Of a stretch of DNA of 64,000 nt, positions 1-48,600 are shown piece after piece. Origin of the DNA: Fimbriosthenelais zetlandica (taxonomy: Eukaryota); contig OZ365110.1 of the NCBI GenBank assembly GCA_977030845.1, positions 45,198,001-45,262,000 on the forward strand, given 5' to 3'. Position 1 is the first letter of the stretch, and the number at the start of each line of letters is the position of its first letter. A program made the position numbers and the translations under genes. The notes beneath the pieces were generated by a model. It had not been told where the DNA came from. It worked only from the letters and a program-made list of their open reading frames with translations, and made no database searches.

Positions 1-2499
1 CTGAATTTCTGCGCCTGGAAATAGAAATATACAAATATAAAAACCATATGATCTATATTAACTATAATAAAGAGCAGCCCCCAGCCTGGATCCTGCCTGC
101 TCTGTTAAGACTCACGAGTGAATTAAAATCAAACCTTTCAACATAAGCCTCGCACCAGAGCTACCTTGATTGATAGAACATGTATAGGTCCTACTGACTT
201 TACTGAAGTTAAAAATCAAAGGACACCAGAGTTGTTTGTATTTTTATAATTATTTATTGTTTTCTTCAGATACGTGAAAGGCAAAATAATAAGCACAATA
301 TAGTCCATCTACGAGGCACAAGATATAGACACAAAGTAAGGCATGTATCATCAGGTTTATGTGAACAACACAATCATTGGACAGTAACAAGATAAGAATA
401 CAACACATCATGAAAATGACGGCGATTGGGAATCAAAGATGATCTGTATTAATACTAACAACATAATCCCACGCGCTCGACAAGGGCTTTTTTATGGGCT
501 AGCCTCCTCGTCTTGGTAGGGCTATAATCCGAATAACTGATAATAATAGTATTTCACAATTCACTGCTTCATATACAAAGATTTGTAGATCGTCCAATAA
601 TGGATTTAGTTAATTTTCTGGTACCGGTACATGTAGCATGCCTCTGTGTCTTAGCTCTCAGTACTTAATTAAACCGGTCTCAAGTTGTTTTGAAGAAGAC
701 ACGTGGGTTGCTGTCGACTTGCACCCTGCAAACTTATTAACATTTTGTAATGCTTGCGTCAGGCCTTTTAAGGTCTGTTAGGCTATTATTTTGGAATTAC
801 TGTTGTTATGGAGCCTATATCTAAACAAATTATGCAAATGCAAGTCTAGCCCCCCGAAGAACGTTTCTTCCCCAACTCAACTTTGATTTTCAAAGAAGTG
901 ATACACCAAATCATAGAATACTGATAATGTCTATGGGAATAATTCTGACAATGTCTGTCTATCATATGTCTCAATATACCAACATAATATTATAGAATAA
1001 TGTTCGTTAAAGAAATATGTACCTGCGTTTCTTGAAATATGTTTTAATCCATTCAGACTTCCAAACCATTAATCTTGTAACATATCAACGGGATGCAAGA
1101 ACATATTATATAACATGGTGCAAAAGAGATGGCACCTCGAGTGAAATGTAACACCCAGATAACAGGGGTTGTTTCTTGATTTGTGCTCCCCACAGTAAAT
1201 GCAATGAAACTCGGAAAATATTTAAAATTCAATATTTATGGAGCCTAAGGGATTTTGGTGCCTGGGATTGGCAGGCAAACTGTGTGTAATAAGAATTGGG
1301 TCACGCCTATATGTAACCAAGGCAACAAGGCGTAGAATGAGTGCATAGCTGGCAATCTATAGGCGTCATCAAGACAATAATTCAGCACTAGGAAAATGGA
1401 AACCACTTTCTATTACAAAAACATGTGTTCCATGATTTTCTTCTTGAGCAATTTCCGTTGTTTTTTTTATATGTATCACTCCAAAGCTTAGGATTTGTAC
1501 AATACAGCCAAATTATATGCCACTAAAAGGCTTCTTACTACAGGTACCGTACCTATCCTTGAAATATTCTCCACTGTCCGCACACTTTTCTCTTTATCAT
1601 TTCCACCAAAATTAAGATGCTTCAACTTTCATATATTTGGGTGTAGGGCAACAGTATCCACCACAGGCAAGACAGGGCGGTAGAAAGCATTGCATAATCT
1701 GCTGGTGTTACCTTGAGAAATAAGAGTAGGGTATGTCACTTGGTGAACATCATATACCGAGGAAAACATGGAGAGCCCCCCAATTATGAGCTTGGTAATT
1801 AATCCAACACAACATTTAATCAATTCAAATTGCTAACAAGTAAGGACTGCTCCACAAGTTTTCCCTTAAATTTGTAAATATTATGTTCTTTTAATTTCTA
1901 AATGAATTCCAAAACCCAAAAATTCTCGACATATCTTGTCAATTAACAATTTCAATATTACATTTTGACCCTTCTACTGACTCGTCGCCTTGTATACAGA
2001 AATCTACTTATTTTCTTTTTATAGGTTTGAACAACTCAAAAAGTAGCCTGAACGACGTCGACGGGTCTGTTTCCAATTGATTATAAATCGTAATAAACTT
2101 AGAATGGTATCTATTTTGTATGTTATTTTAGCTGCCTTCTGTTTCTAAACAGTATTTTTCTTCGCCCATCGTCAGTTTCCTGAAGCAGCATATACATGTA
2201 CACTATTATAATATGGCTTATAGTTACACCTATTATAATTCAACCAAAAATTAAGCGAGTGCAAAAATAAGAAGATTATTCCAAATTGTAACAAATGAAA
2301 TTTCATCATATAGAGTACATACATGATTGAGAAACAATATTATAATTAATAATTATGTAAGATTGGACAATGAATTTTTGTTATTATCGGGACATAAAAC
2401 ATACACCTTTCTGGATGAATCTTATATTATAAACTTGTGCTGTTGATATATGAATATCAGAAATTCCTTTAGACAAATATATAAAACATCTCCAAAAGT

Positions 2500-3560
2500 T
2501 TTAGATTTGAAAATTTCTTTCAAAATTTGAGGACAGAATTCCCATTGTATTTTGGTTCGAAGGACATGATGTGGGCAGGATAAGATTGTAAATAGCATTC
2601 ACATGTAGAATAGAAACATTTTTCTTTAATCTTGAGTTTGTATCAAAATGGCATGAATTGGGGACAGTTAGATAGACAACGGTCGGACGTTTCTCTGTGA
2701 ATATGATGTGACAATTCATATATCGATCAAAGTTCCCAATGTTTATGGAAAAGCAGATTTGACAGGAGGAAAGGAGGGTCCAACAAGTACAGGAATATTA
2801 AAAGGTAACAATGTGTGCTTGATATGATGAAAATTGACAAATATGTTTGGTATTTTTGGCATCCATGACCGTTTAATTCTAACCTCGTCCATTATAAACG
2901 ACACAAAAGATTTACTGTGGAACTTGGAAAGTGATCTGATAATTATTTTCTCAGTCGTAGCTCGCTGTCTATTCGTGAATCTGGCTTTTAATTCAGGGGA
3001 AACAGATAGATCTAAGGAATCTTTGGAGTTCAAACCACATTGTTTTCATATCAGATGAGCACATCAAGGAACAAATTACTCACAGAAGAGCTACATACTC
3101 TTCACTCTTATATTATTGTGAGCGATAATACAATATTTTTCTATAGCCAATATAAATGCTTCTCAAACATAATACTTCATGTCATAGTGGTGATAATCAT
3201 ACACGAACAGTGATCATCTTAAATTTTCAAAACCATCAAGTTTGACTCGTAATTCATCAGATTCGACATGGAAACTTTCCTTCCCAGTTATAAACTCTAA
3301 ATTTCCATTTCATTAAACCAGGGATGGCAAATGTAGTCCGGAGGAGGGGCAAAGAACGAGAGACCTTTCGATGAGAGAAAATCTTAGGCCATGAAGATGT
3401 CTGAAGGAAACTCTGGATGGTCTGGGTAATTCATAAACAGAACATTACTGATCAAGTCATAACCAGGTTAGTAAATACCAAGAATCTTATCTCTAAACTC
3501 TGCCACTCTCGTTTCGTATACCTGATGAAAGCGAAGCACTCCCCCACACAAACAAAAAGA
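2500..3560 (-). pseudogene. decayed protein-like reading, family unknown
   Basis: Stop- and frameshift-interrupted translations such as YETRVAEFRDKILGIY*PGYDLISNVLFMNYPDHPEFPSDIF and HIVTF*YSCTC look coding-derived. No confident family call. Confidence 0.2.
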
Positions 3561-5277
3561 AACACATAGTGAGTAGACCCTGTAGATTTCTGGATTATTT
3601 CGTTTAATTAAGCACCTAGGGATATTCATATATGCACAAATGGTAAGAGAACTAACTAATAAATGAGCTCAGTCTCAGACTGATAATTGGGTCATGGGTT
3701 ACCACAGCTCGTCACCTTGCAGGCCGAGTGGTGCGGACAACCATTTCCTCCCCAAGTTAATTATTGGATCCTTTACCCTTATATTCCTATATACAAAAAC
3801 CTTCAATCTCAAATGTCATTCCAAATTTCCTAAATTTCATTTCGTTGCGCATCTTTCAACAGGACACAACATGTCAGTATCTTTCTGTCATTTGCTCTAA
3901 TTTCATTCAGTTCGGACTGTCTTACTCAAACGAGTAATTAGTGGGTATAGTTCTATAGCTTACAACTGAACAGCATTTCGATCTAACCTAACTGCAGATA
4001 ATGTATCTTCAAAATTCAATCTATGCATCTATATGCATAATAAAATCGGTCATAATCCTCACTAACTCTACACTGATTACTAATCATTGCAATCAATCCA
4101 TAAATTCCTCAAGTAAGCAACATCGGGGGATCACAGGCAATACAGCTTCTACCCATCATGGCGTAGGGGAAAATAACATACTTAACATAACACAAGCATG
4201 AACCTAATACAAAAACAAAGACTCTAAATAAAACATTAAACAAACATAATCCAGTGGAAATAAAAAGATAAAAAGAAATCGGGAGGGAAACCTCGCTTTC
4301 ATTAGGTATAAATAATCTTCACATCTGAACTCCAATTTCACATTTTTTTTCTCAATAAAGTTCATTCAATTTTAAAACTCTTTTGGTATTTGTTTGTTAC
4401 GAGACATGATTGTCTCCACAAAGAGATTTTTGACCACGTCAAGTTTGTTTTCTGGTGGATAAACATTGGGACTTTCATTGACATACCGTTAATGGTATGT
4501 AATGAGTTGTGTGAGGCAGATTGAGAGAGATGAGTAATGCCTCTCATCCCCACAAGAGCACAGCAGAGGCTAGAGCCTACCTTGGTCTATCACCTAAAAA
4601 GAAAGCCCTCTTCTTTTGTTGTACAGACATGGCAACCCTTGATACATACAAAAAAAATCATGACAGCATGAATACCTTGATCTCAAGGTAAATAAAAGTG
4701 TACCAAACTGTCGCGCACCAAAATATAGTGGTTCTGCCCTTGTTATTATTATTATAAGGGGGCATTATGAAATACTATAGCAGAGCCATCTAGCATTTTA
4801 CAACCAAAATTAAGTATGCATTACCTAGCGCAAAGCAAGCAGGCCATCGCTCCCGCTCTCCTCGCCTATCGTAACAAAAATATGGCGACGGACTATATAT
4901 ATATGTACGCGTGTGTGTCACAGACAACGCACTACGTACGCACACATCTATGCACTGTGGTACGCAGTCAGTCTGTCGCATCTGAATAAAACATAATTAA
5001 CCATAAGGGGCATTTTTTCTGGGATGAATCTGACAATGTGAATATGACAATGTATAAAGCCTTGGGCTTCTGTTTGAAATGAAAAGAGGGGGAAAATAAA
5101 GAGAAAATAATACATAGAGTTCGCCTGATTCACATTGATGCCTTGGCCGTAGATCTATGCCCACTATTGGGAACATAATAGTATGTATGGTAATATAATC
5201 CAACACCACTTTGGTGTGTCACTCCCATTTTACATGCTACAGCATCTAGGTACTAGTTATCATCGGGCTCTATACAG

Positions 5278-25705: not shown

Positions 25706-28112
25706 ATATATATTAGGCCTAGATGTGACACCAGGAAAAAACTAATAAAGTAGCAATGGCAAAATACTCATGAAGGCACCTTTTCCAGCTTATCAGCAGG
25801 ACCATATTTTAGCCGACTAAACCATCCATTGTTTTCACCAAAGAATACAATAATCAGATAACATCTTCAAACATCCCCACTAACGAGAAATACTGCTGCC
25901 TATCTTTCCTCTTCTTAATGTTGGAGACAAGCCCTAGCGGAAAGGGCGCAAGTTGCAACCCACTCAATATCCATCCCTACCTGATGTAATGGGGAGATGA
26001 GGGGCATAAATCGTGGGCAGGGGACCAGTAAAGCACCTCCAAAGACAGGTACTGGTACCGCGGCTATCTGATCCAGGCCTTTTTTGCCCAGTCTTTCCTT
26101 GCCACATCTGTGTTTTATGTGGCAAGGTAATTAAGTCGTTTGAATTATCGATGGTAACGTGCTGTAATTATGCTGCAGCGTTCACAAGCCATCGCCATGA
26201 TCCAAATGAAAGCATGATCATACATGATTCTATATAAGATTATCCCAATGGAATGGGCAAAACTACATGGAGTAATATACCATTGCAGGAACTGACATAC
26301 CAAAGATAATTATGGTATTTAATTCATTTGGAAGTTCCCCTAAATCTATAGAAGGATACCTCAGATACAAAAACCTTCTCTAAACCAGAGGTTTTATAAT
26401 GTGCCTCAATGTACTTCAGTGAACCTATTCAGTACGTCATTCTAACAGTATACCTCCAACAGGTTTCTCCACAAACGCTGCTTTAAATACAACCATCAAC
26501 TAATGAAGATGGAATTGATGAACAATTATACTTTGTAATACACATCTCTAATTAGGAGTGAAAGTATCATAAATACTAGTTCCCATTTTTTTTTTTGTAT
26601 CTACACAGAAACATGTGTCTTTAGTTGAAATGCTGGTCAGCGGGGAGTTTATGTTAGTCTTGAAGAAGCAGTAGAGGAGGGTCTATATTTAACCAAGTAC
26701 AAATTTATGAAGACAGTTGTGTGGGTTAAAAGTCGGGAGGGAAGGGAAGATTGGTCCTGTTTTGATGTTAATGAAGGCTGAGGTTGAATGACCTACTGAG
26801 AGTACAGAAAGGACATTGAGGGTATAATCTTTTACCTTCCTGAAACTCGCAGATAACAACCCACCAACTACAAAATCCATATTAGTTTAGAACCACTAAA
26901 TATCATTTGGCTTCATGTCCAATTATTAGGTGAAAGAATCCAAACTATGAATTAGCTTCCAAGTATTCACGCAGAAACCAGATGTTGCCTACGGCTTCGA
27001 CATATTGCAACATATGAATATTACATAATAATTGCGATATGAATCAAAATAATTTCACGCTCTGTTCCTGAGATGAATGCCAGTAATTTAGAGGGAGGAA
27101 GCCATGGCAATAGCTCTGGTATATCAGCCAAGCGTGCAATATCTACACAGGGCAGAGTTCACTGCTCGAGCCTTAATGAGAGACGCGGGCAAATGCACAC
27201 ATGAAAAGCGTCATCAAAGCATGAGAGGGTGTGACAAAGTAAGTAAATATTGTCAATCATTATTCATTCTCGCCAAACGCATTGTGACAGGGGAGGTGTA
27301 GGGGAGATGAGGCGAGTCGAGCTTCAACAAATTGATATACACCTTATTGTATGTAGTTAAAATGGCAAGAGCAAGATATCTTGCTCTAAGTTTAACTTAA
27401 TAAGGATCTAGAAAAGTCTACGATAATAGTTCCATGGTCTTGTTAATTAAGTAGAGTGATGTCAATAGGAAACAACAAAAAAACTGAAGCAAAGCAACAG
27501 GAATCAGTTACTAGCGTTCTGAAAATCCCCCAGGGAGCATTTTTATACAGAGATTCTAAGCCCTTCCTCGTGGATGGATGTGAATAATTGAATGCCAACT
27601 TCTTGTCAGACAGGTAATGATTGATGCTTTTAGTTGACGCAGCTGATAAATCGCTCACTGACTTGTAACCTGCTAACCTGCAAGACATCCTCAATCTGTC
27701 TAATGATTACTGATATTAGAAACCAGGAATGAAATGCTTACATCAACGAGCTCTGTCCATTATAAAAAGAGATTACCATAAATCTATCCTCCCTTTATTA
27801 ATCTCCAGTTATGTTTTGTTGATTGAGTTGCTAATTGACGGTATTTATTATGAGTTATACATTAGGCAGATTAAACACTGGCTGGCTGCAATTAAGATAA
27901 CGTAAGGACAAAGTTCATGTCTATAGGCTTACTGCAGAAAATTAAGAAATGGGAATAAAAGGACGTGGAGATTGTCCCTGGACTGAAAATAGAAGACAGG
28001 TGCATTCCCATAAAGACCTGAAGAGATTTCTTAAATAAAGAACAACCCTAGATCATCAATTTATGATGTCGGTAGCACTTAAATGACCTCTCCCCCACAC
28101 CATTCTACTCAC

Positions 28113-28411
28113 CAAGCCTTTTGGTGCATTCCGTCGGAAGAACGCTTTGCAGGATTCACAAGAAATGGCATCGAAGTTGTATCCAAGTGCTCGGTCACCA
28201 CACACCCCACATATTTTGTCCTCTTTGTTTTTCCTCGCTCGTCCTGGTCCTTGTGTCGGGGAGGGGACACCTCCAGGTCCCATGGAGCCTGGAGGCATGC
28301 CTCCCGAGGCCCCGAGGCCTTCCAGGTAGGGCCCGTCCACCTCGACCTTGATGTCCATGTCAAGGTGATGAGGCGGCAGGTAACGCCCCACAGGCTCGCC
28401 TATATGTATCC
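28113..28411 (-). CDS. HR96: HR96/NR1J-like nuclear receptor, A/B region + first zinc-finger exon (299 nt)
   Basis: Acceptor TCTTTATCTTTTCAG|GG and donor TTG|GTGAGT. It encodes [33 protein letters not shown], whose ESCKA P-box is diagnostic of the NR1J group. The exon starts in phase 1, so an upstream exon exists (or translation starts at the internal MDIKVEV). Confidence 0.95.
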
Positions 28412-41900: not shown

Positions 41901-42707
41901 TGATGATGTTTTTTTTGTTCCTCGTTTACCTCTCCCTCAGTGTTGTTAACTTAGTGTTCGTTCCAGGACGTCAGGGTGGAGGGCTGGGGCGGGGGCGTTA
42001 GAGAGTATAATGGTACAGGGTAAGGGGAGGGTGGGGAGTGCTGGTAGGGAGGGAGGGGGGGAGGAGGAAGGTGGGAGAGATGTTGTGGGGGAGAGTGTGA
42101 TCGGCAGGAGAGATAGGAGTTGCTCACTACCCATAAACTTGCCACACCAGGATACAGACTTGATGAGCTCATCCCATCACCACCGGCTCCACCTATATCT
42201 CCACAACAAACTCATTTCCCAACTACTGTCCACAGTTAAACTCTCCCCTCCCTCTTATTTCCAGCTTTAAATTACGTAACATTTCATAAGGATTTTCGCC
42301 CTTTAATTTATTATCTCGGTAATTTCACAGATAGGTTCTGGTTACATAACCAATTCTATTCCATTATATGAGAAGGAAAACAGGACATTAGATTTCTGTC
42401 CAAATCTAAAACAAATTGTTTTAAACGTGGCTTTAATCTTAGAGCAAACCTTTACCCTAAGCTTTAATATAAATGTTCTTTCCTCAATTCCATAGAACGT
42501 TAGTTTAAACGTCGTGATATTTAAAAGGACTCTGTATTATAATGGAAATGAATACCACTAGTTATGAAGCATAGCTGGGCAAATCCCACAGTCATCTTTC
42601 ATACTAAGTGATTTTATTAGGACAGATAAGCAAACATTCTCCGACTGATATGGATTGGCTGGAGCCCAATTGATCGGCGAATACTGTAATTTGAAATTTG
42701 GAGCAAC

Positions 42708-43279
42708 TGTTAATGTGGGGATTCAGACGTTTTACTTTTAATGCTTGATTACAATGTGATATAGGGGTTGGCATCTTGTTTGTGTAAGTGACATGTCTGA
42801 GCTTGCAACTTGACAATGGCCAGCATCAATGCCAGCATTATAGCTTTGTCAGCTTGTAACAAACAAAGGGACAATAACATAAAAAGGGGAAATCTGGGTA
42901 ATATTGAAATGGGCCAATGACGGTTAAGGGTATAGATGGGAACAGTTTAAAAAGGCATGCTGTAGGGACAATCAGGGTCACTTGTGATCCACCCGTGGCA
43001 GGGGTTTAAGGTCACTTGTTGACTCCCGAATTATTGGGCAACAACTCCACCACTAACATTCTACTGTCTTCACCTACCATATATTCTAGGGGGATATAGC
43101 TGGGAAAGGAATACAACTAGGAGTATATCTTTGGACATTGTGTATCAACTGTATCTTTGGACATTGTATATGAAATATATTGGATGTTATATAAGGCATA
43201 AATAAATAAGTGGCAAGCCATTAAAGCATACGATCTCTGGTCGTCTCTAATATACAGAGGTCAGCCCCGTATATTTACA
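42708..43279 (+). repeat. 5' LTR (572 bp)
   Basis: Starts TGT and ends ACA. No difference from 45100-45671 was found by eye. TATA-like TATATAAG at 43188 and AATAAA at 43201. Confidence 0.95.
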
Positions 43280-43280
43280 C

Positions 43281-43299
43281 TGGTGTGAGAACCCGGTTT
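43281..43299 (+). promoter_or_regulatory. primer-binding-site-like sequence TGGTGTGAGAACCCGGTTT
   Basis: Begins TGG 1 nt after the LTR end. The first 11 nt match the tRNA-Leu-type PBS TGGTGTCAGAA at 10/11. The priming tRNA cannot be assigned firmly. Confidence 0.7.
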
Positions 43300-43346
43300 G
43301 GCTTGCCCTTAATTTTTGCCTTGGGAGTAATATATTGGACAGAATT

Positions 43347-44870
43347 ATGGCGGACTTGGACGATTTCTTCAGGAGAATGGGGGAGAAGATGGATAGAATG
43401 TTGGAGAGGCAGATCCCACAACCTCAGCGACCAACATTTCAACCTGCATATCCACAACAACCATGGAATGCATATCAACCACAATACAACCAACACCAGG
43501 TCCAACAACAGCAATTTCCACAAGTATATCAACAGGTACCACAACAACCCTTCCACAGACAACATCAGGTACAGCAACATTTCATACAACAGGTACCACA
43601 ACAGCCATTCTTTAGACAACATATAGGGCAACAACAATACTTCAGACAACAACAAGCACCACAACAGCAGATAAATAATTTTAGACAACATCAAGTACCA
43701 CACCAACAGTTCATTCGAGAAAAGCAGTTCTTCAGTCAACAACAGCGACCACAACATCATTCTTTTACACAACAGCGACCACAACAGCATTACTTTACAG
43801 AACAGCAACCACAACAGCAGTCTTTCAAACAACAGCAACAGCAAGAACCGTCCTTCAGACAAGAACTTTACTCACTCTTACGTGAACTGGTTAATGAAAA
43901 TGACAATGAACTGCAAGATGAACTAGATGAACTGGACGACAAACAGGATGATGAACTGGGTGGTGCCAAGGATGATGAATTGGACTATGTACATTTTGAA
44001 AAACAGAATGATGAACTGAAGAAGACACTGGATAATGACGTGAATAATGGACAAAAGGAATGGTATGATAAACTCGAGGACAAACAGGACAATGAAGATT
44101 CAGACAAACAGGTAGATGATGATCTGGATGAAAAACAGGACAATATACTAGGTAATATACAAGTTAATGAACCAAATGTTACACTGAATGATGAACTGAT
44201 TGATGAACCAAATGATACACTGATTGATGAACTGATTGATGAACCAAATGATACACTGAATGATGAACTGATTGATAAACCAAATGATACACCGATTGAT
44301 GAACCAAATGATACACTGATTGATGAACCAAATGATACACTGATTGATGAACTGATTGATGAACCAAATGATACACCGATTGATGAACCAAATGATACAC
44401 TGATTGATGAACTGATTGATGAACCAAATGATACACTGAATGATGAACTGATTGATAAACCAAATGATACACCGATTGATGAACCAAATGATACACCGAT
44501 TGATGAACTGATTGATGAACCAAATGATACACTGAATGATGAACTGATTGATGAACCAAATGTTACACTGAATGAGGAATTGAAGAATGAACTTGATGAA
44601 AAACGGGACCATCAAATGTGTGACAAACAGGTTGATAAACATTTCGACAAAAATGTTGATGATTCAGATATTATGATCATGGTGTCAGGGGAAAATGATG
44701 GGTCTCAAGATCAGCAACCATGTATCATGGGCAGTGTGGATGTTTTAGTTCCAAAGGTAGTCCAAGGATGGACTGGAATAAGAAGGAGGGGGAGCTATGT
44801 AACAAATTGCTGGGATGCCAAGGCTTTTAAAGAAACTATTTTCAGGGGCCTAGTATCTTGTGCTGGATAG
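43347..44870 (+). CDS. uncharacterised 507-aa low-complexity protein carried by the LTR element (Q-rich N-half, acidic tandem-repeat C-half)
   Basis: Uninterrupted 1.5-kb ORF filling most of the internal region. The first ATG at 43347 has a good context (ATTATGG); the ORF track starts at TTG 43335. No recognisable domain or signal peptide. Confidence 0.65.
   Translation: MADLDDFFRRMGEKMDRMLERQIPQPQRPTFQPAYPQQPWNAYQPQYNQHQVQQQQFPQVYQQVPQQPFHRQHQVQQHFIQQVPQQPFFRQHIGQQQYFRQQQAPQQQINNFRQHQVPHQQFIREKQFFSQQQRPQHHSFTQQRPQQHYFTEQQPQQQSFKQQQQQEPSFRQELYSLLRELVNENDNELQDELDELDDKQDDELGGAKDDELDYVHFEKQNDELKKTLDNDVNNGQKEWYDKLEDKQDNEDSDKQVDDDLDEKQDNILGNIQVNEPNVTLNDELIDEPNDTLIDELIDEPNDTLNDELIDKPNDTPIDEPNDTLIDEPNDTLIDELIDEPNDTPIDEPNDTLIDELIDEPNDTLNDELIDKPNDTPIDEPNDTPIDELIDEPNDTLNDELIDEPNVTLNEELKNELDEKRDHQMCDKQVDKHFDKNVDDSDIMIMVSGENDGSQDQQPCIMGSVDVLVPKVVQGWTGIRRRGSYVTNCWDAKAFKETIFRGLVSCAG
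44166..44579 (+). repeat. coding tandem repeat built from 24-nt (DEPNDTLI) and 12-nt (DELI) modules
   Basis: Repeated gatgaaccaaatgatacactgatt and gatgaactgatt units. All unit lengths are multiples of 3. Confidence 0.95.
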
Positions 44871-45085
44871 ATATGCATTTCAATATTATATTATTTTTAC
44901 AAATCATCTGATTAATGATATTTTTGACACGGACTGTCCAAAGGAAATTTCTTGCTTTATTATTAGGGTTCGCCCAGGAGTGCGAAAACAAAGGAGGAAG
45001 GAATGTTAATGTGGACATGTATAATGTTATTCTTTTCTTGAAATTTCTATGTTTATTATAAGGGTTCGCCCAGGAGTGCGAAAGC

Positions 45086-45099
45086 AAAGGAGGAAGGAA
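45086..45099 (+). promoter_or_regulatory. polypurine tract AAAGGAGGAAGGAA
   Basis: Pure purine run directly abutting the TG of the 3' LTR. Confidence 0.9.
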
Positions 45100-45671
45100 T
45101 GTTAATGTGGGGATTCAGACGTTTTACTTTTAATGCTTGATTACAATGTGATATAGGGGTTGGCATCTTGTTTGTGTAAGTGACATGTCTGAGCTTGCAA
45201 CTTGACAATGGCCAGCATCAATGCCAGCATTATAGCTTTGTCAGCTTGTAACAAACAAAGGGACAATAACATAAAAAGGGGAAATCTGGGTAATATTGAA
45301 ATGGGCCAATGACGGTTAAGGGTATAGATGGGAACAGTTTAAAAAGGCATGCTGTAGGGACAATCAGGGTCACTTGTGATCCACCCGTGGCAGGGGTTTA
45401 AGGTCACTTGTTGACTCCCGAATTATTGGGCAACAACTCCACCACTAACATTCTACTGTCTTCACCTACCATATATTCTAGGGGGATATAGCTGGGAAAG
45501 GAATACAACTAGGAGTATATCTTTGGACATTGTGTATCAACTGTATCTTTGGACATTGTATATGAAATATATTGGATGTTATATAAGGCATAAATAAATA
45601 AGTGGCAAGCCATTAAAGCATACGATCTCTGGTCGTCTCTAATATACAGAGGTCAGCCCCGTATATTTACA
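45100..45671 (+). repeat. 3' LTR (572 bp)
   Basis: Direct copy of the 5' LTR, preceded by a PPT and followed by the TSD CAAC. Confidence 0.95.
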
Positions 45672-48600
45672 CAACCACTTATCGATCCGAGTACACAACA
45701 GTGGTAGGACATCATAGGAAAGGAATGCAGAAGGTTCATAAAATTTTATATCTCATTCTTTATGACTAGAGGGAACACTCGACCAAGTGTTCTTTCTCTA
45801 GCAGCAGTTATCAGATGTTAAAATAGTGGAATTGAAATCAAGCCCACCTCAGCCAAGAACAGAGATAGATGTCCACCATTAGATTTATATTGTACTTTGT
45901 TTATGTGTGCTGGAGTGCTATCATCAATGTACCCCATAAATTTCTGAAATAATATACGATTAATATGATTGTGCCTCCTCAAATGACCAAGTCAATCGAT
46001 CAATAGACGAGCAATATCGCAGACAATTCTTAAATAGTTATCTAAGAAGAGATGATAACGATTTCCATAAACCGAAAGTAGGCTTAACGAATCCATATCA
46101 CAATTGTCATTGTTGTGCCCCCTCTATAGCCAATCAATACATGCGAATAAAATATTGACTAGTAATGCTTTCACAATCAGTAAGCACGTTGGCTAAGTTG
46201 AACACGTACAGTTATATGGGGGTCCAAGTTGCAGGTCTATTGTTGGTACTTTCTGATAAGATGTCCCATTTAAAACGACCTTACCATGTACCACACACAT
46301 GTATGCAATCTGATTCAGGCGCCACAACACAATATTTGCCAAATCCTGGTACTCTGATCATTACCATGTACACATACAAATTATGTATCTAAAAAGCTCT
46401 TCGAAACAAACGTTATTAACGTATTCATAGTATTGACCTTCTTTGCATAAAATCTGGGCGAATGTACGTGAACTGTTCAACTGTTACATGTACATTGTAA
46501 TATACATTACACCTTCGGTTTTAATATAAGAATTGACAAGACACGTGATGCTAATCTGGCTGTTCTAAAAAAAAGTGAAGCACTTAACATAGGTCGATTC
46601 AAGGTGTACAGTACATTAGTTTCATTAGTTCTTTGGCACAGGACACAATAGCAACCAGGAATAATCCTTAACTAATTCCTAAAGCAAATATTGGATGGCT
46701 CAGCCATTTATACAGGAGCCACAGGGGTGTCAAGGTGCGAGGCAGACATATATTAGGTGAACCTGTAAGATAAACGTTCAAGAAACAAAGATGCTGAAAA
46801 GAGGACAAAATAATAATGTGATTCTAAACAGAGAATAATAAATATTATATACTATTCATTTTACTTTCCTGGTTATTATGAATTTATATGGCATGAATCT
46901 GGTCCATTTCTATATAAGTTATGGTTTTGGAAAGAATGATTGATGAGCCATGATAAAAATAACAATATGCCTAGTAAAAATTTAATTTTAATGAATCTAA
47001 TGCAGCTTATGGAACCAACCTCTACTTCCTGCATTTTGAATTGGTCCGCGGAACATATCCCTCCCAATCTTCATTCCAAATGGCATGAATCTGTTGTTTA
47101 GAGAGGCATGGGTGTATCTATATACATGTAAACCCCTTAAGAGTAGAATCCTCGCCCCGGGGGCTTTTCCAGCGTCTCTAACAATGACCAGCCACAACAA
47201 CAATAATAAAGCCCAATCCTCTCCTCTCGCTCACTCAATGGCCGGATTGGGGTCGTGCATCACATGTAATCCTCTTTTGAAACCTTTAAGTGAACATGCT
47301 GGGTTCTGGCGAGGTAGTTGAGCGATAATTGGCAGTTTCAGCTTTAAGTGCTCATTACGTCTGAATGTGTATTGAAAATCCGGGTGTGTGTAAAGGGGCC
47401 CAGACGATAGGTCACTTGGCGGTTTTGGTGGCAAAAGGAAAGCAATCAACCACTAAAGGAAGACAACAAAGTGACCAATAGTTGCTTGTGGGTGTTTATT
47501 GTTGTCCTGTGTTGCTGTAGGGTTGTATAGGGATGGATTAGGATATGTAATATGGGTGGATTTGTATGGCGGTGACGGTTAGTCAGTGGGAGGAAAAATA
47601 GACGGAATCAGCAGCGCGTACTTGAGTACACAGAGGTTATGTCCGCGCCATCCAGAGAACACTCCAACAACCAGGTCCTTCCTGGCTTCACTCTAATATA
47701 CCATCCCCCACCCTGGAGGAGAGAGGCATGTGGGTCAATGGCTTCCTAACCTCTCCACACTGGTCTATTATTCCTTACAGATGTGTGTATTGTGAACTAG
47801 TCCGTGTACTCAACACTCTTTCTTGTTGCTACAGCCTTCTCCTACTCATTAACTCCAGTGCTCGTAGATCACCTGGAGGGGGAGGGTTCAGCGTTCCTCC
47901 AGCGTTCAATGGGCGCCAAAGCAGTCAGTGAAGCCAGCGTTGCCTGGTTAAAACCCTGGTGTCTGGGTGACAGTTAAAGCTGTCTTATGAAGCTGTCAGA
48001 GGACTGTCAGACCGTTGACAGCACCCACTGTCACCTCTGGTGTCTGGCCAGCGTTCTCCCGGCGTTAGCTACCGCCAATACAAGTCTCCTGAGTTGGGGG
48101 GAGAGGAGTATAACACGAGGCTATGCGGCCTCGAGTCCCAAACCCAGCCACCAGAGAATCTATGTCAGACGGGGAACCTTCCTCTGTTATAGGTCTAATA
48201 CCACAGGTCTGCTGCTTTGTTCGCCATACATACACCTACCCCTCCTCCTGCGTCTCCCCATTAAGCTAGATCCTGTCTTAATGGGTAGATGACCCAGTCA
48301 AGTGACCAATGGTCTCCTGGAGGAGTTCACAGTCATGCACTTCCTCCAGACAGCTGAAGAACTGGTTTTGTTGTAAAAGGGTTGGCGAGGGCAGGCAGCA
48401 GCACTAGCACTCCTCCACCTCCTCTTCTAATAGTATTCTCGTACTATGGAGCCGCCGAGCGGTTTGCACTCGCTGTTTGAGGCTGATTCTGTAGCCAGGA
48501 GAGGAGAGAGAAGGGAGAGAGCTTATTGAATGTTGTCCCTAGCGCGGCGATGGTGAGGTGGCCCTATGCCGCTTAGTACAGTGCACGCACTTAGGTGCAT

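What the first reader, a model, noticed from the sequence alone, without database searches (positions are those of the whole stretch)
42704..45675. Very young non-autonomous LTR retrotransposon carrying a cargo ORF instead of gag-pol
Seen: 572-bp LTRs with no differences found by eye, intact TG..CA ends, a CAAC TSD, PBS and PPT. The 1.8-kb interior is almost filled by one intact 507-codon ORF lacking RT, RNase H, integrase, protease and CCHC motifs. Known: LTRs are identical at insertion, so this is recent, and elements without pol need a helper in trans. Known TRIM/LARD elements are usually non-coding. Inference: an active parasite-of-a-parasite family that keeps a protein of its own, inserted antisense in the 5' region of an HR96-like gene and possibly polymorphic. 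This is the best candidate for an undescribed system in this window.
Basis: partly seen in the sequence, partly recalled or inferred. Interest (0 to 1): 0.8.

Follow-up and report, generated by a model that had tools for sequence, protein, structure and literature searches.

The report
Young gag-derived non-autonomous LTR retrotransposon
This is a real, very recently inserted small LTR retrotransposon, one of about 19 copies in an animal genome, whose single gene is a stripped-down descendant of a capsid (gag) gene, not foreign cargo, and which most likely borrows its enzymes from an 8-kb relative with the same ends and primer site.

Summary
The window has two 572-bp LTRs that are 100% identical, with TG..CA ends, a CAAC duplication on both sides, a primer-binding site, a polypurine tract and an intact 507-codon ORF. 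No RT, integrase, protease or CCHC domain is present.

The element belongs to a family with 19 ORF-bearing copies, and every ORF is open. Thirteen of the 15 copies examined have identical LTR pairs. Sister copies carry an extra N-terminal domain, which is the first lobe of a Ty3/gypsy-type capsid. A cousin family keeps a full capsid plus four zinc knuckles, followed by the same acidic repeats and the same C-terminal tail. So the ORF is a degraded gag, and the window copy is a "short form" that lost the capsid lobe.

A likely helper exists. It is an 8.03-kb element in five copies, with 711-bp LTRs, a 489-aa gag frame and a 1420-aa pol frame that contains an integrase. It shares the LTR termini, primer site and leader with this family.

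The reading frame is under constraint across the family: 26 of 26 indels are multiples of three, and no stops occur. Within the short form alone, however, no amino-acid-level selection is visible.

Expression and insertion polymorphism could not be tested. The closest known kind is the plant TR-GAG element.

The parts
42704..42707 (+). 5' target-site duplication, CAAC
   Evidence: Same 4 bases at 45672-45675. 4-bp duplications were also found at 18 other insertions of the family.
42708..43279 (+). 5' LTR, 572 bp, TG...CA. Contains TATATAAGG at 43188-43196 and AATAAA at 43201-43206; promoter and poly(A) roles are inferred only.
   Evidence: 100% identical to the 3' LTR. 41 LTR matches at 84-100% identity were scored in the genome.
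43281..43296 (+). Primer-binding site, TGGTGTGAGAACCCGG
   Evidence: The 19-mer spanning the LTR end plus the PBS occurs at 34 places exactly and 44 places with up to 2 mismatches. These include the five 8-kb autonomous copies. The primer tRNA was not identified.
43270..43324 (+). Last 10 nt of the LTR, the PBS and a 27-nt leader, all shared with the autonomous partner
   Evidence: 98% identity over 55 nt at all five partner copies.
43347..44870 (+). ORF of 507 codons plus stop. Short N-terminal helix; Q/P/F-rich region (residues 23-175, 39% Q); hyper-acidic region (residues 176-425, net charge -76); conserved C-terminal tail.
   Evidence: No Pfam domain. AlphaFold2 mean pLDDT 37.8, no confident fold.
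44167..44583 (+). In-frame tandem repeats with 12-nt periodicity (TRF periods 36/60/96) encoding DEPNDTLIDELI-type units. Copy number varies between copies.
44622..44867 (+). Conserved C-terminal tail, ending TIFRGLVSCAG
   Evidence: Found at 26 places in the genome, all in gag-only LTR elements, with none in the partner or in host genes. dN/dS is 0.41 against the cousin family, with dS about 1. No homologue in the 5.8-billion-protein search.
44944..45014 (+). Upstream copy of the 96-nt unit: inner polypurine tract (44990-45003) followed by TGTTAATGTGG
   Evidence: 93% identical to 45040-45110. Use of this inner PPT explains the sister copies whose LTRs are 96 nt longer, each with a matching TSD.
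45086..45099 (+). Polypurine tract used for this copy, AAAGGAGGAAGGAA
45100..45671 (+). 3' LTR, 572 bp
45672..45675 (+). 3' target-site duplication, CAAC

Best explanation
**What it is.** The stretch is a recently inserted, non-autonomous LTR retrotransposon of Ty3/gypsy ancestry. It is the "short form" of a family with 19 ORF-bearing copies.

**How it moves.** It has no enzymes of its own. It is most likely reverse-transcribed and integrated by the proteins of an 8.03-kb autonomous relative present in five copies. The two share the first 11 and last 10 LTR bases, the PPT end, the primer-binding site and a 27-nt leader.

**What the ORF is.** It descends from gag. Cousin families encode capsid, four zinc knuckles, acidic repeats and the C-tail. 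The long form keeps only the first capsid lobe. The short form, including the window copy, lost that lobe through a deletion that created a new ATG.

**What the protein looks like and may do.** What remains is a mostly disordered protein: a Q/aromatic-rich half, a hyper-acidic repeat half and a conserved C-terminal tail. I infer that this protein, or its translation, helps the element's RNA reach the helper's particles, for example as an adaptor or condensate-forming partner of helper Gag. That would explain why the frame is kept open across the family.

**Shown versus inferred.** Shown: the anatomy, the family, the gag descent, the shared cis signals and the frame constraint. Inferred: trans-mobilisation by that particular partner, and any activity of the protein.
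For: - **Anatomy:** confirmed.
- **Family:** 15 full-length copies were examined. Thirteen have 0 LTR-LTR mismatches, and all have 4-bp TSDs.
- **Open frames:** all 19 copies that carry the C-tail have open frames of 359-627 aa.
- **Gag descent:** the long-form N-domain gives a weak Retrotrans_gag match (E=0.005). Its only hit among 1.8 billion representatives is a Ty3_capsid+CCHC protein. It matches the cousin ORF at E=9e-20, and that ORF has four CCHC knuckles and the same tail. The modelled N-lobe best matches the dArc1, PNMA2 and Arc capsids.
- **Short form as a deletion:**
- **Partner:** five copies share the PBS and leader at 98% over 55 nt. Their LTR starts with the same 11 nt after GGAA. 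LTR-start spacing is 7320-7321 bp and the LTR is 711 bp. The gag frame of 489 aa is 60% identical to the N-domain. Integrase lies in a 1420-aa frame 4.55 kb from the PBS. There is no BEL/Pao peptidase at these loci.
- **Frame constraint:** 26 of 26 CDS indel runs are multiples of 3, against 3 of 16 in the LTRs. The probability of no stop in the Q-rich region after 74 random substitutions is 0.013.
- **Selection on sequence:** pN/pS is 0.08-0.5 by region. The C-tail dN/dS is 0.41 across families.
Against: - Within the short form alone, variant codons are 2 synonymous to 23 non-synonymous. Some of this may be repeat misalignment. Even so, amino-acid-level selection is not visible for the window's own variant, and its open frame could simply reflect youth.
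Its RT and protease were therefore not seen, and its Ty3/gypsy assignment rests on gag similarity, domain order and exclusion of BEL/Pao.
- The Integrase_H2C2 search list was saturated and uninformative.
- There are no expression data.
- The N-domain Pfam match is below the curated cut-off, and the fold matches have weak E-values (0.045 at best).
Confidence: 0.55

Rival explanations
1. Same element and same helper, but the ORF of the short form no longer matters. It is a decaying gag remnant that is still open only because all copies are very young and most length changes are slippage of 12- and 30-nt repeats, which cannot break the frame.
For: The short-form copies differ by 2 synonymous and 23 non-synonymous variant codons. 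In non-repeat parts, the pairwise counts are about what neutrality predicts. Nearly all copies have identical LTRs. The protein has no confident fold and no homologues outside this genome. The chimeric copy L038a replaced most of the ORF with a LINE fragment and still sits between intact LTRs.
Against: Five single-codon indels and several large non-repeat indels are also multiples of three, while LTR indels are not. The Q-rich region diverged by 18% between forms without a stop (P=0.013). The C-tail is conserved at the protein level across families whose synonymous sites are saturated. All 19 copies are open.
Confidence: 0.3
2. The protein is a Gag-derived inhibitor or copy-number regulator of the helper, working like Ty1 p22 or the endogenised Drt2. 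It would not be an aid to the element's own spread.
For: Truncated Gag proteins that poison particle assembly are known for Ty1 (PMC4599808). Ty1 capsid-derived restriction factors appeared among the fold matches. The non-autonomous copies outnumber the five helper copies.
Against: The window ORF has no capsid lobe left with which to co-assemble. It is carried by a mobile parasite, not by a fixed host locus. Nothing here tests inhibition.
Confidence: 0.08
3. One reading: the ORF, or at least its acidic-repeat plus C-tail module, is a captured foreign (host or other) gene carried as cargo.
For: The tail and acidic module are absent from the autonomous partner at the sensitivity used. The family does capture foreign sequence: L038a carries a LINE RT fragment.
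Against: No host copy of the tail exists in the genome; all 26 hits are inside gag-only LTR elements. In cousin families the module sits in frame directly after a complete gag. No homologue was found elsewhere.
Confidence: 0.07

Closest known systems
TR-GAG elements of plants (terminal-repeat retrotransposons with a GAG domain; described in Coffea, Arabidopsis and Triticeae, as cited in PMC13570524)
   Same: Small (<4 kb) LTR elements with a PBS, a PPT and a single gag-related ORF but no pol. They are regarded as semi-autonomous and dependent on a partner. Subfamilies are mosaic.
   Different: This is an animal genome. The window copy has lost the capsid domain altogether, and the long form keeps only the first lobe with no zinc knuckles. 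The ORF is extended by acidic tandem repeats and a conserved tail that the partner lacks. In the literature I could search, TR-GAG is reported only from plants.
LARD / TRIM non-autonomous LTR elements
   Same: No enzymes; rely on LTRs, PBS and PPT; mobilised in trans.
   Different: LARDs and TRIMs are defined as non-coding, and TRIMs are under about 1 kb. Here 84% of the interior is an ORF whose frame is under constraint.
Ty1 Gag prion-like domain and retrosome formation (PMC10002725, PMC10466094)
   Same: A Q-rich, low-complexity region inside a Gag-lineage protein. In Ty1 such a domain is required for the foci where particles assemble.
   Different: That is Ty1/copia in yeast. No homology is claimed, and the resemblance is compositional only (39% Q). 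Nothing about condensates was tested here.
Ty1 p22 / Drt2, Gag-derived inhibitors (PMC4599808; PDB 9rxy)
   Same: A shortened Gag-lineage protein that could act on a full-length element's particles.
   Different: Those keep the capsid C-terminal domain and restrict the element. The window ORF keeps no capsid lobe and is carried by a mobile parasite.

Membership tests
LTR retrotransposon (structural definition) | Two direct long terminal repeats with TG..CA ends, flanked by a short target-site duplication | tested here: met
   572-bp LTRs, 100% identical, TG..CA ends, CAAC on both sides.
LTR retrotransposon (structural definition) | Primer-binding site after the 5' LTR and polypurine tract before the 3' LTR | tested here: met
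   TGG-initiated PBS at 43281-43296 and PPT at 45086-45099, both conserved across the family. The matching tRNA was not identified.
Non-autonomous LTR element | Lacks reverse transcriptase, RNase H, integrase and protease | tested here: met
   Pfam finds no domain in the only long ORF at E<=10. The interior is only 1820 bp.
Non-autonomous LTR element | An autonomous partner with matching cis signals exists in the same genome | tested here: met
   Five 8.03-kb copies share the LTR termini, PPT end, PBS and leader, and carry gag and integrase frames. Their RT was not seen directly.
TR-GAG | The single ORF encodes a recognisable GAG (capsid) domain | tested here: not met
   The window ORF has no Pfam match, and alignment shows the capsid lobe is deleted. 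Long-form sisters retain only the N-lobe (Retrotrans_gag E=0.005, below the cut-off). The cousin family meets the criterion.
TR-GAG | Size under about 4 kb with LTRs, PBS and PPT, and no pol | tested here: met
   2964 bp; family range 2.9-3.6 kb.
LARD / TRIM | Internal region without coding capacity | tested here: not met
   Intact 507-codon ORF. All 19 copies are open, and all 26 CDS indel runs are multiples of three.
Ty3/gypsy (Metaviridae) lineage | Gag of the Ty3/Arc capsid type | tested here: inconclusive
   Relatives match Ty3_capsid and Retrotrans_gag. P0001 scores above the cut-offs, while the cousin ORF and the N-domain score below them. The best fold matches are dArc1, PNMA2 and Arc, but with weak E-values.
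Ty3/gypsy (Metaviridae) lineage | Pol domain order PR-RT-RH-IN in the partner | tested here: inconclusive
   The integrase lies late in a 1420-aa frame, 4.55 kb after the PBS. There is no BEL/Pao peptidase at these loci. RT and PR were not seen because the sequence could not be fetched.

The most novel reading that the evidence does not exclude
The acidic-repeat plus conserved C-tail module, found only in the gag-only relatives and never in the autonomous partner, is an acquired "hijacker" domain. The short form shows that this domain, together with a Q-rich disordered region, suffices for spread without any capsid or nucleocapsid. That would make this a protein-coding satellite of a retrotransposon, with its own dedicated factor for exploiting the helper's particles.
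Probability: 0.2. Interest if true: 0.75.

Novelty: new variant of a known kind. Interest (0 to 1): 0.5.

Why it matters
One genome holds a graded series from a complete element to a capsid-less parasite. The steps are:
- an 8-kb autonomous element;
- gag-only elements with full capsid and zinc knuckles;
- elements with only the first capsid lobe;
- elements with none.

All share the same primer site and LTR ends, and nearly all examined copies of the window family have identical LTR pairs. This is a natural system for two questions: what a non-autonomous LTR element actually needs from its own gag, and why such elements keep an ORF at all.

Gag-only non-autonomous LTR elements are described mainly in plants, so a young family like this one in an animal would be a useful counterpart. 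For annotators, the practical lesson is that the ORF should not be called a host gene.

Tried and rejected
- **Homology searches that found nothing.** Pfam on the window ORF. The 5.8-billion-protein search with the C-tail and with the cousin gag. The ESM Atlas with the C-tail. PDB sequence searches gave only non-significant hits. Rfam over the element gave only sub-threshold snoRNA-like noise. No tRNA gene was found in the window to match the PBS.
- **Look-ups that returned nothing.** The exact-protein look-up of the ORF in public assemblies found no record. Two searches for sequencing runs listed none, so read laying was never used and expression and polymorphism remain untested.
- **AlphaFold2 on the window ORF.** Mean pLDDT was 37.8, so the model was not used for fold search.
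- **Integrase_H2C2 search.** It was meant to class the partner, but the list was saturated by other abundant families.
- **Fetching the partner and further relatives.** I did not try to get round it.
- **Bacterial-type promoter/terminator scan.** Not applicable to this genome.
- **Retrozyme or ribozyme content.** Considered and dropped; no Rfam hit.
- **A CaaX-type lipidation motif at the C-terminus.** Considered and dropped, because only two residues follow the cysteine.
Full report
**1. The observation**

- The two LTRs (42708-43279 and 45100-45671) are 572 bp each, with no mismatch and no gap.
- They start TGTTAA and end TTTACA, and CAAC flanks both sides.
- One base after the 5' LTR comes TGGTGTGAGAACCCGG, a TGG-initiated primer-binding site.
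- AAAGGAGGAAGGAA lies directly before the 3' LTR.
- The 1820-bp interior holds one ORF of 507 codons, 43347-44870, whose ATG has A at -3 and G at +4. It is the first ATG after the LTR.
- Pfam finds no domain in the ORF even at E<=10.

A 96-nt unit ending in the polypurine tract plus the first 11 LTR bases occurs twice (44944-45014 and 45040-45110, 93% identical).

**2. The family**

The window is G000:C10:45198001-45262000 in a 447-Mb assembly. A search with the LTR scored 41 matches at 84-100% identity, mostly in pairs 2.3-3.0 kb apart.

I fetched 15 full-length copies.
- Thirteen have no difference between their own two LTRs. Three more have 1-3 differences, and one (L037) has very different LTRs.
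- LTRs of different copies differ from each other by 1-13%.
- Every insertion has its own 4-bp duplication, and so do the solo LTRs.
- In eight copies the LTR begins 96 nt earlier, at the inner TGTTAATGTGG, and the duplications fit that boundary. Plus-strand priming from either of the two polypurine tracts explains both LTR lengths. This mechanism is my inference from the anatomy.
- A search with the ORF's last 82 residues finds 19 copies of this family, all with open frames of 359-627 aa. Two of them are the same locus on two contigs.

**3. What the ORF is**

The copies fall into two forms.

The long form has about 100 extra N-terminal residues. Three lines of evidence tie this domain to gag:
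- It gives a weak Retrotrans_gag match (E=0.005, below the cut-off).
- Its only hit among 1.8 billion representative proteins (E=6e-4) is a protein with Ty3_capsid, Retrotrans_gag and a CCHC knuckle.
- It matches the ORF of a cousin LTR element (L051, LTR spacing 3747 bp) at E=9e-20.

That cousin ORF has a capsid region and four CCHC knuckles, followed by acidic tandem repeats and the same C-terminal tail ending TIFRGLVSCAG. An AlphaFold2 model of the cousin's capsid region is confident only in the N-lobe (pLDDT 71-83). Its best PDB matches are the dArc1 capsid (E=0.045, probability 1.0), PNMA2 and the Arc N-lobe. These scores are weak, but all point the same way.

The short form includes the window copy. 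It shares the first ~62 nt after the LTR with the long form and then jumps to the end of the N-domain, with a new ATG at the junction. So the ORF is a gag descendant, and the window copy has lost every recognisable capsid part.

What remains in the window ORF:
- a short N-terminal helix;
- a Q/P/F-rich region with 39% Q;
- a hyper-acidic region with net charge -76 and 12-nt periodic repeats;
- the conserved C-terminal tail.

AlphaFold2 gives no confident fold (mean pLDDT 37.8). The alignment behind that model was shallow.

**4. The helper**

The 19-mer spanning the LTR end and the primer-binding site occurs at 44 places with up to two mismatches. Five of these places share the following features:
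- a 489-aa frame that is 60% identical to the long-form N-domain;
- an integrase core inside a 1420-aa frame, 4.55 kb downstream of the primer-binding site;
- 98% identity to the window over the last 10 LTR bases, the primer-binding site and 27 nt of leader;
- LTRs that start with the same 11 bases after GGAA.

Their LTR starts are 7320-7321 bp apart and the LTR is 711 bp, so the element is about 8.03 kb. A BEL/Pao peptidase search returned an unsaturated list with no hit at these loci. Together with the gag type and the late integrase, this points to Ty3/gypsy.

RT and protease were therefore not seen. The tail is absent from these copies and from host genes: all 26 profile hits lie in gag-only elements.

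**5. Is the ORF maintained?**

For maintenance:
- All 26 distinct indel runs in the coding alignment are multiples of three, including five single-codon ones. Only 3 of 16 in the LTR alignment are.
- The Q-rich region differs at 74 of 408 aligned bases between the two forms without a stop. Random placement of that many changes leaves the frame open in 1.3-1.4% of trials.
- pN/pS is 0.08 in the N-domain and 0.44-0.53 elsewhere. These come from few sites and non-independent pairs.
- The tail has dN/dS 0.41 against the cousin family, with synonymous sites near saturation.

Against maintenance:
- Among the short-form copies alone I count 2 synonymous and 23 non-synonymous variant codons. Part of this may be repeat misalignment, but it gives no sign of amino-acid-level selection in the window's own variant.
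- One chimeric copy replaced most of the ORF with a LINE fragment.

One further pattern: the 3' half of the ORF differs by at most 1-2% between copies whose LTRs differ by up to 13%. This points to frequent recombination between subfamilies, to faster LTR evolution, or to both.

**6. Mechanism**

Shown: the element has all the cis signals and no enzymes, its family has inserted many times very recently, and a complete relative with the same signals is present.

Inferred: that relative supplies the reverse transcriptase and integrase, and probably the capsid.

More speculative: the retained protein helps the element's RNA reach the helper's assembly sites. Two precedents bear on this, and neither was tested here. 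Ty1 Gag needs a prion-like domain for retrosome formation (PMC10002725). Truncated Ty1 Gag can instead inhibit the element (PMC4599808).

**7. Comparison and novelty**

The nearest described kind is the TR-GAG element of plants: a small LTR element with only a gag ORF, called semi-autonomous (PMC13570524). In the library I could search, all 15 papers that use that term together with "non-autonomous" and "LTR retrotransposon" concern plants. I found no animal counterpart. The library is incomplete, and Repbase and Dfam could not be consulted.

The window copy fails the defining TR-GAG feature, a recognisable GAG domain. It also fails the non-coding criterion of LARD and TRIM elements. I therefore rate it a new variant of a known kind.

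My composition figures agree with that.

**8. Verdict**

The feature is real and the family was very recently active. The "cargo" reading is replaced by "degraded gag with an added acidic and tail module". Interest is moderate. The graded series from autonomous element to capsid-less parasite within one genome is the attractive part. The function of the protein, its expression and insertion polymorphism remain open.

Noticed in passing
window 28110-28241 (-): Exon encoding a nuclear-receptor C4 zinc-finger DNA-binding domain ([29 protein letters not shown]; Pfam zf-C4 E=2.5e-11). The element lies about 14.5 kb upstream of it on the opposite strand. Whether that position is an intron or intergenic DNA is unknown.
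   Followed up: partly
L038 (G000:C21:3952012-3957704), locus 405-5193: Three-LTR tandem (LTR-interior a-LTR-interior b-LTR) flanked by a single AAAG duplication. Interior a starts as the short-form ORF and then switches into a LINE-like reverse-transcriptase fragment (RVT_1 E=1.9e-24). This is evidence of template switching or sequence capture.
   Followed up: partly
L037 (G000:C11:12680778-12684644): One copy has a matching CATG duplication but very different LTRs (555 vs 594 bp, 32 mismatches, 49 gap columns). This suggests gene conversion or recombination after insertion.
   Followed up: no
L031, L034-L036, L038-L041 and solo LTRs L046, L047, L049: LTR length dimorphism. In these copies the LTR begins 96 nt earlier, at the inner TGTTAATGTGG, and the target duplications match that boundary. 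Plus-strand priming from either of the two polypurine tracts would explain this.
   Followed up: yes
G000:C25:22676096, 22680984, 22685872: Three identical PBS sites spaced exactly 4888 bp apart, with gag-like frames of 306, 306 and 787 aa. This looks like a tandem array of a related gag-only element.
   Followed up: no
L051 1-4700 and 9300-10000: The cousin element sits in a block of complex repeats (units spaced roughly 500-900 bp, 60-100% identical) that continues on its other side.
   Followed up: no
L039 (C39) and L040 (C38): The same insertion with identical flanks appears on two contigs. This is probably a haplotig or a recent duplication, so the 19 copies represent 18 independent loci.
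   Followed up: no
whole genome: The genome holds hundreds of integrase-bearing LTR elements with long open pol frames (many of 1400-1570 aa, often in identical-score groups), plus BEL/Pao elements with 1700-2100-aa frames. This is an unusually young and active retrotransposon population.
   Followed up: no
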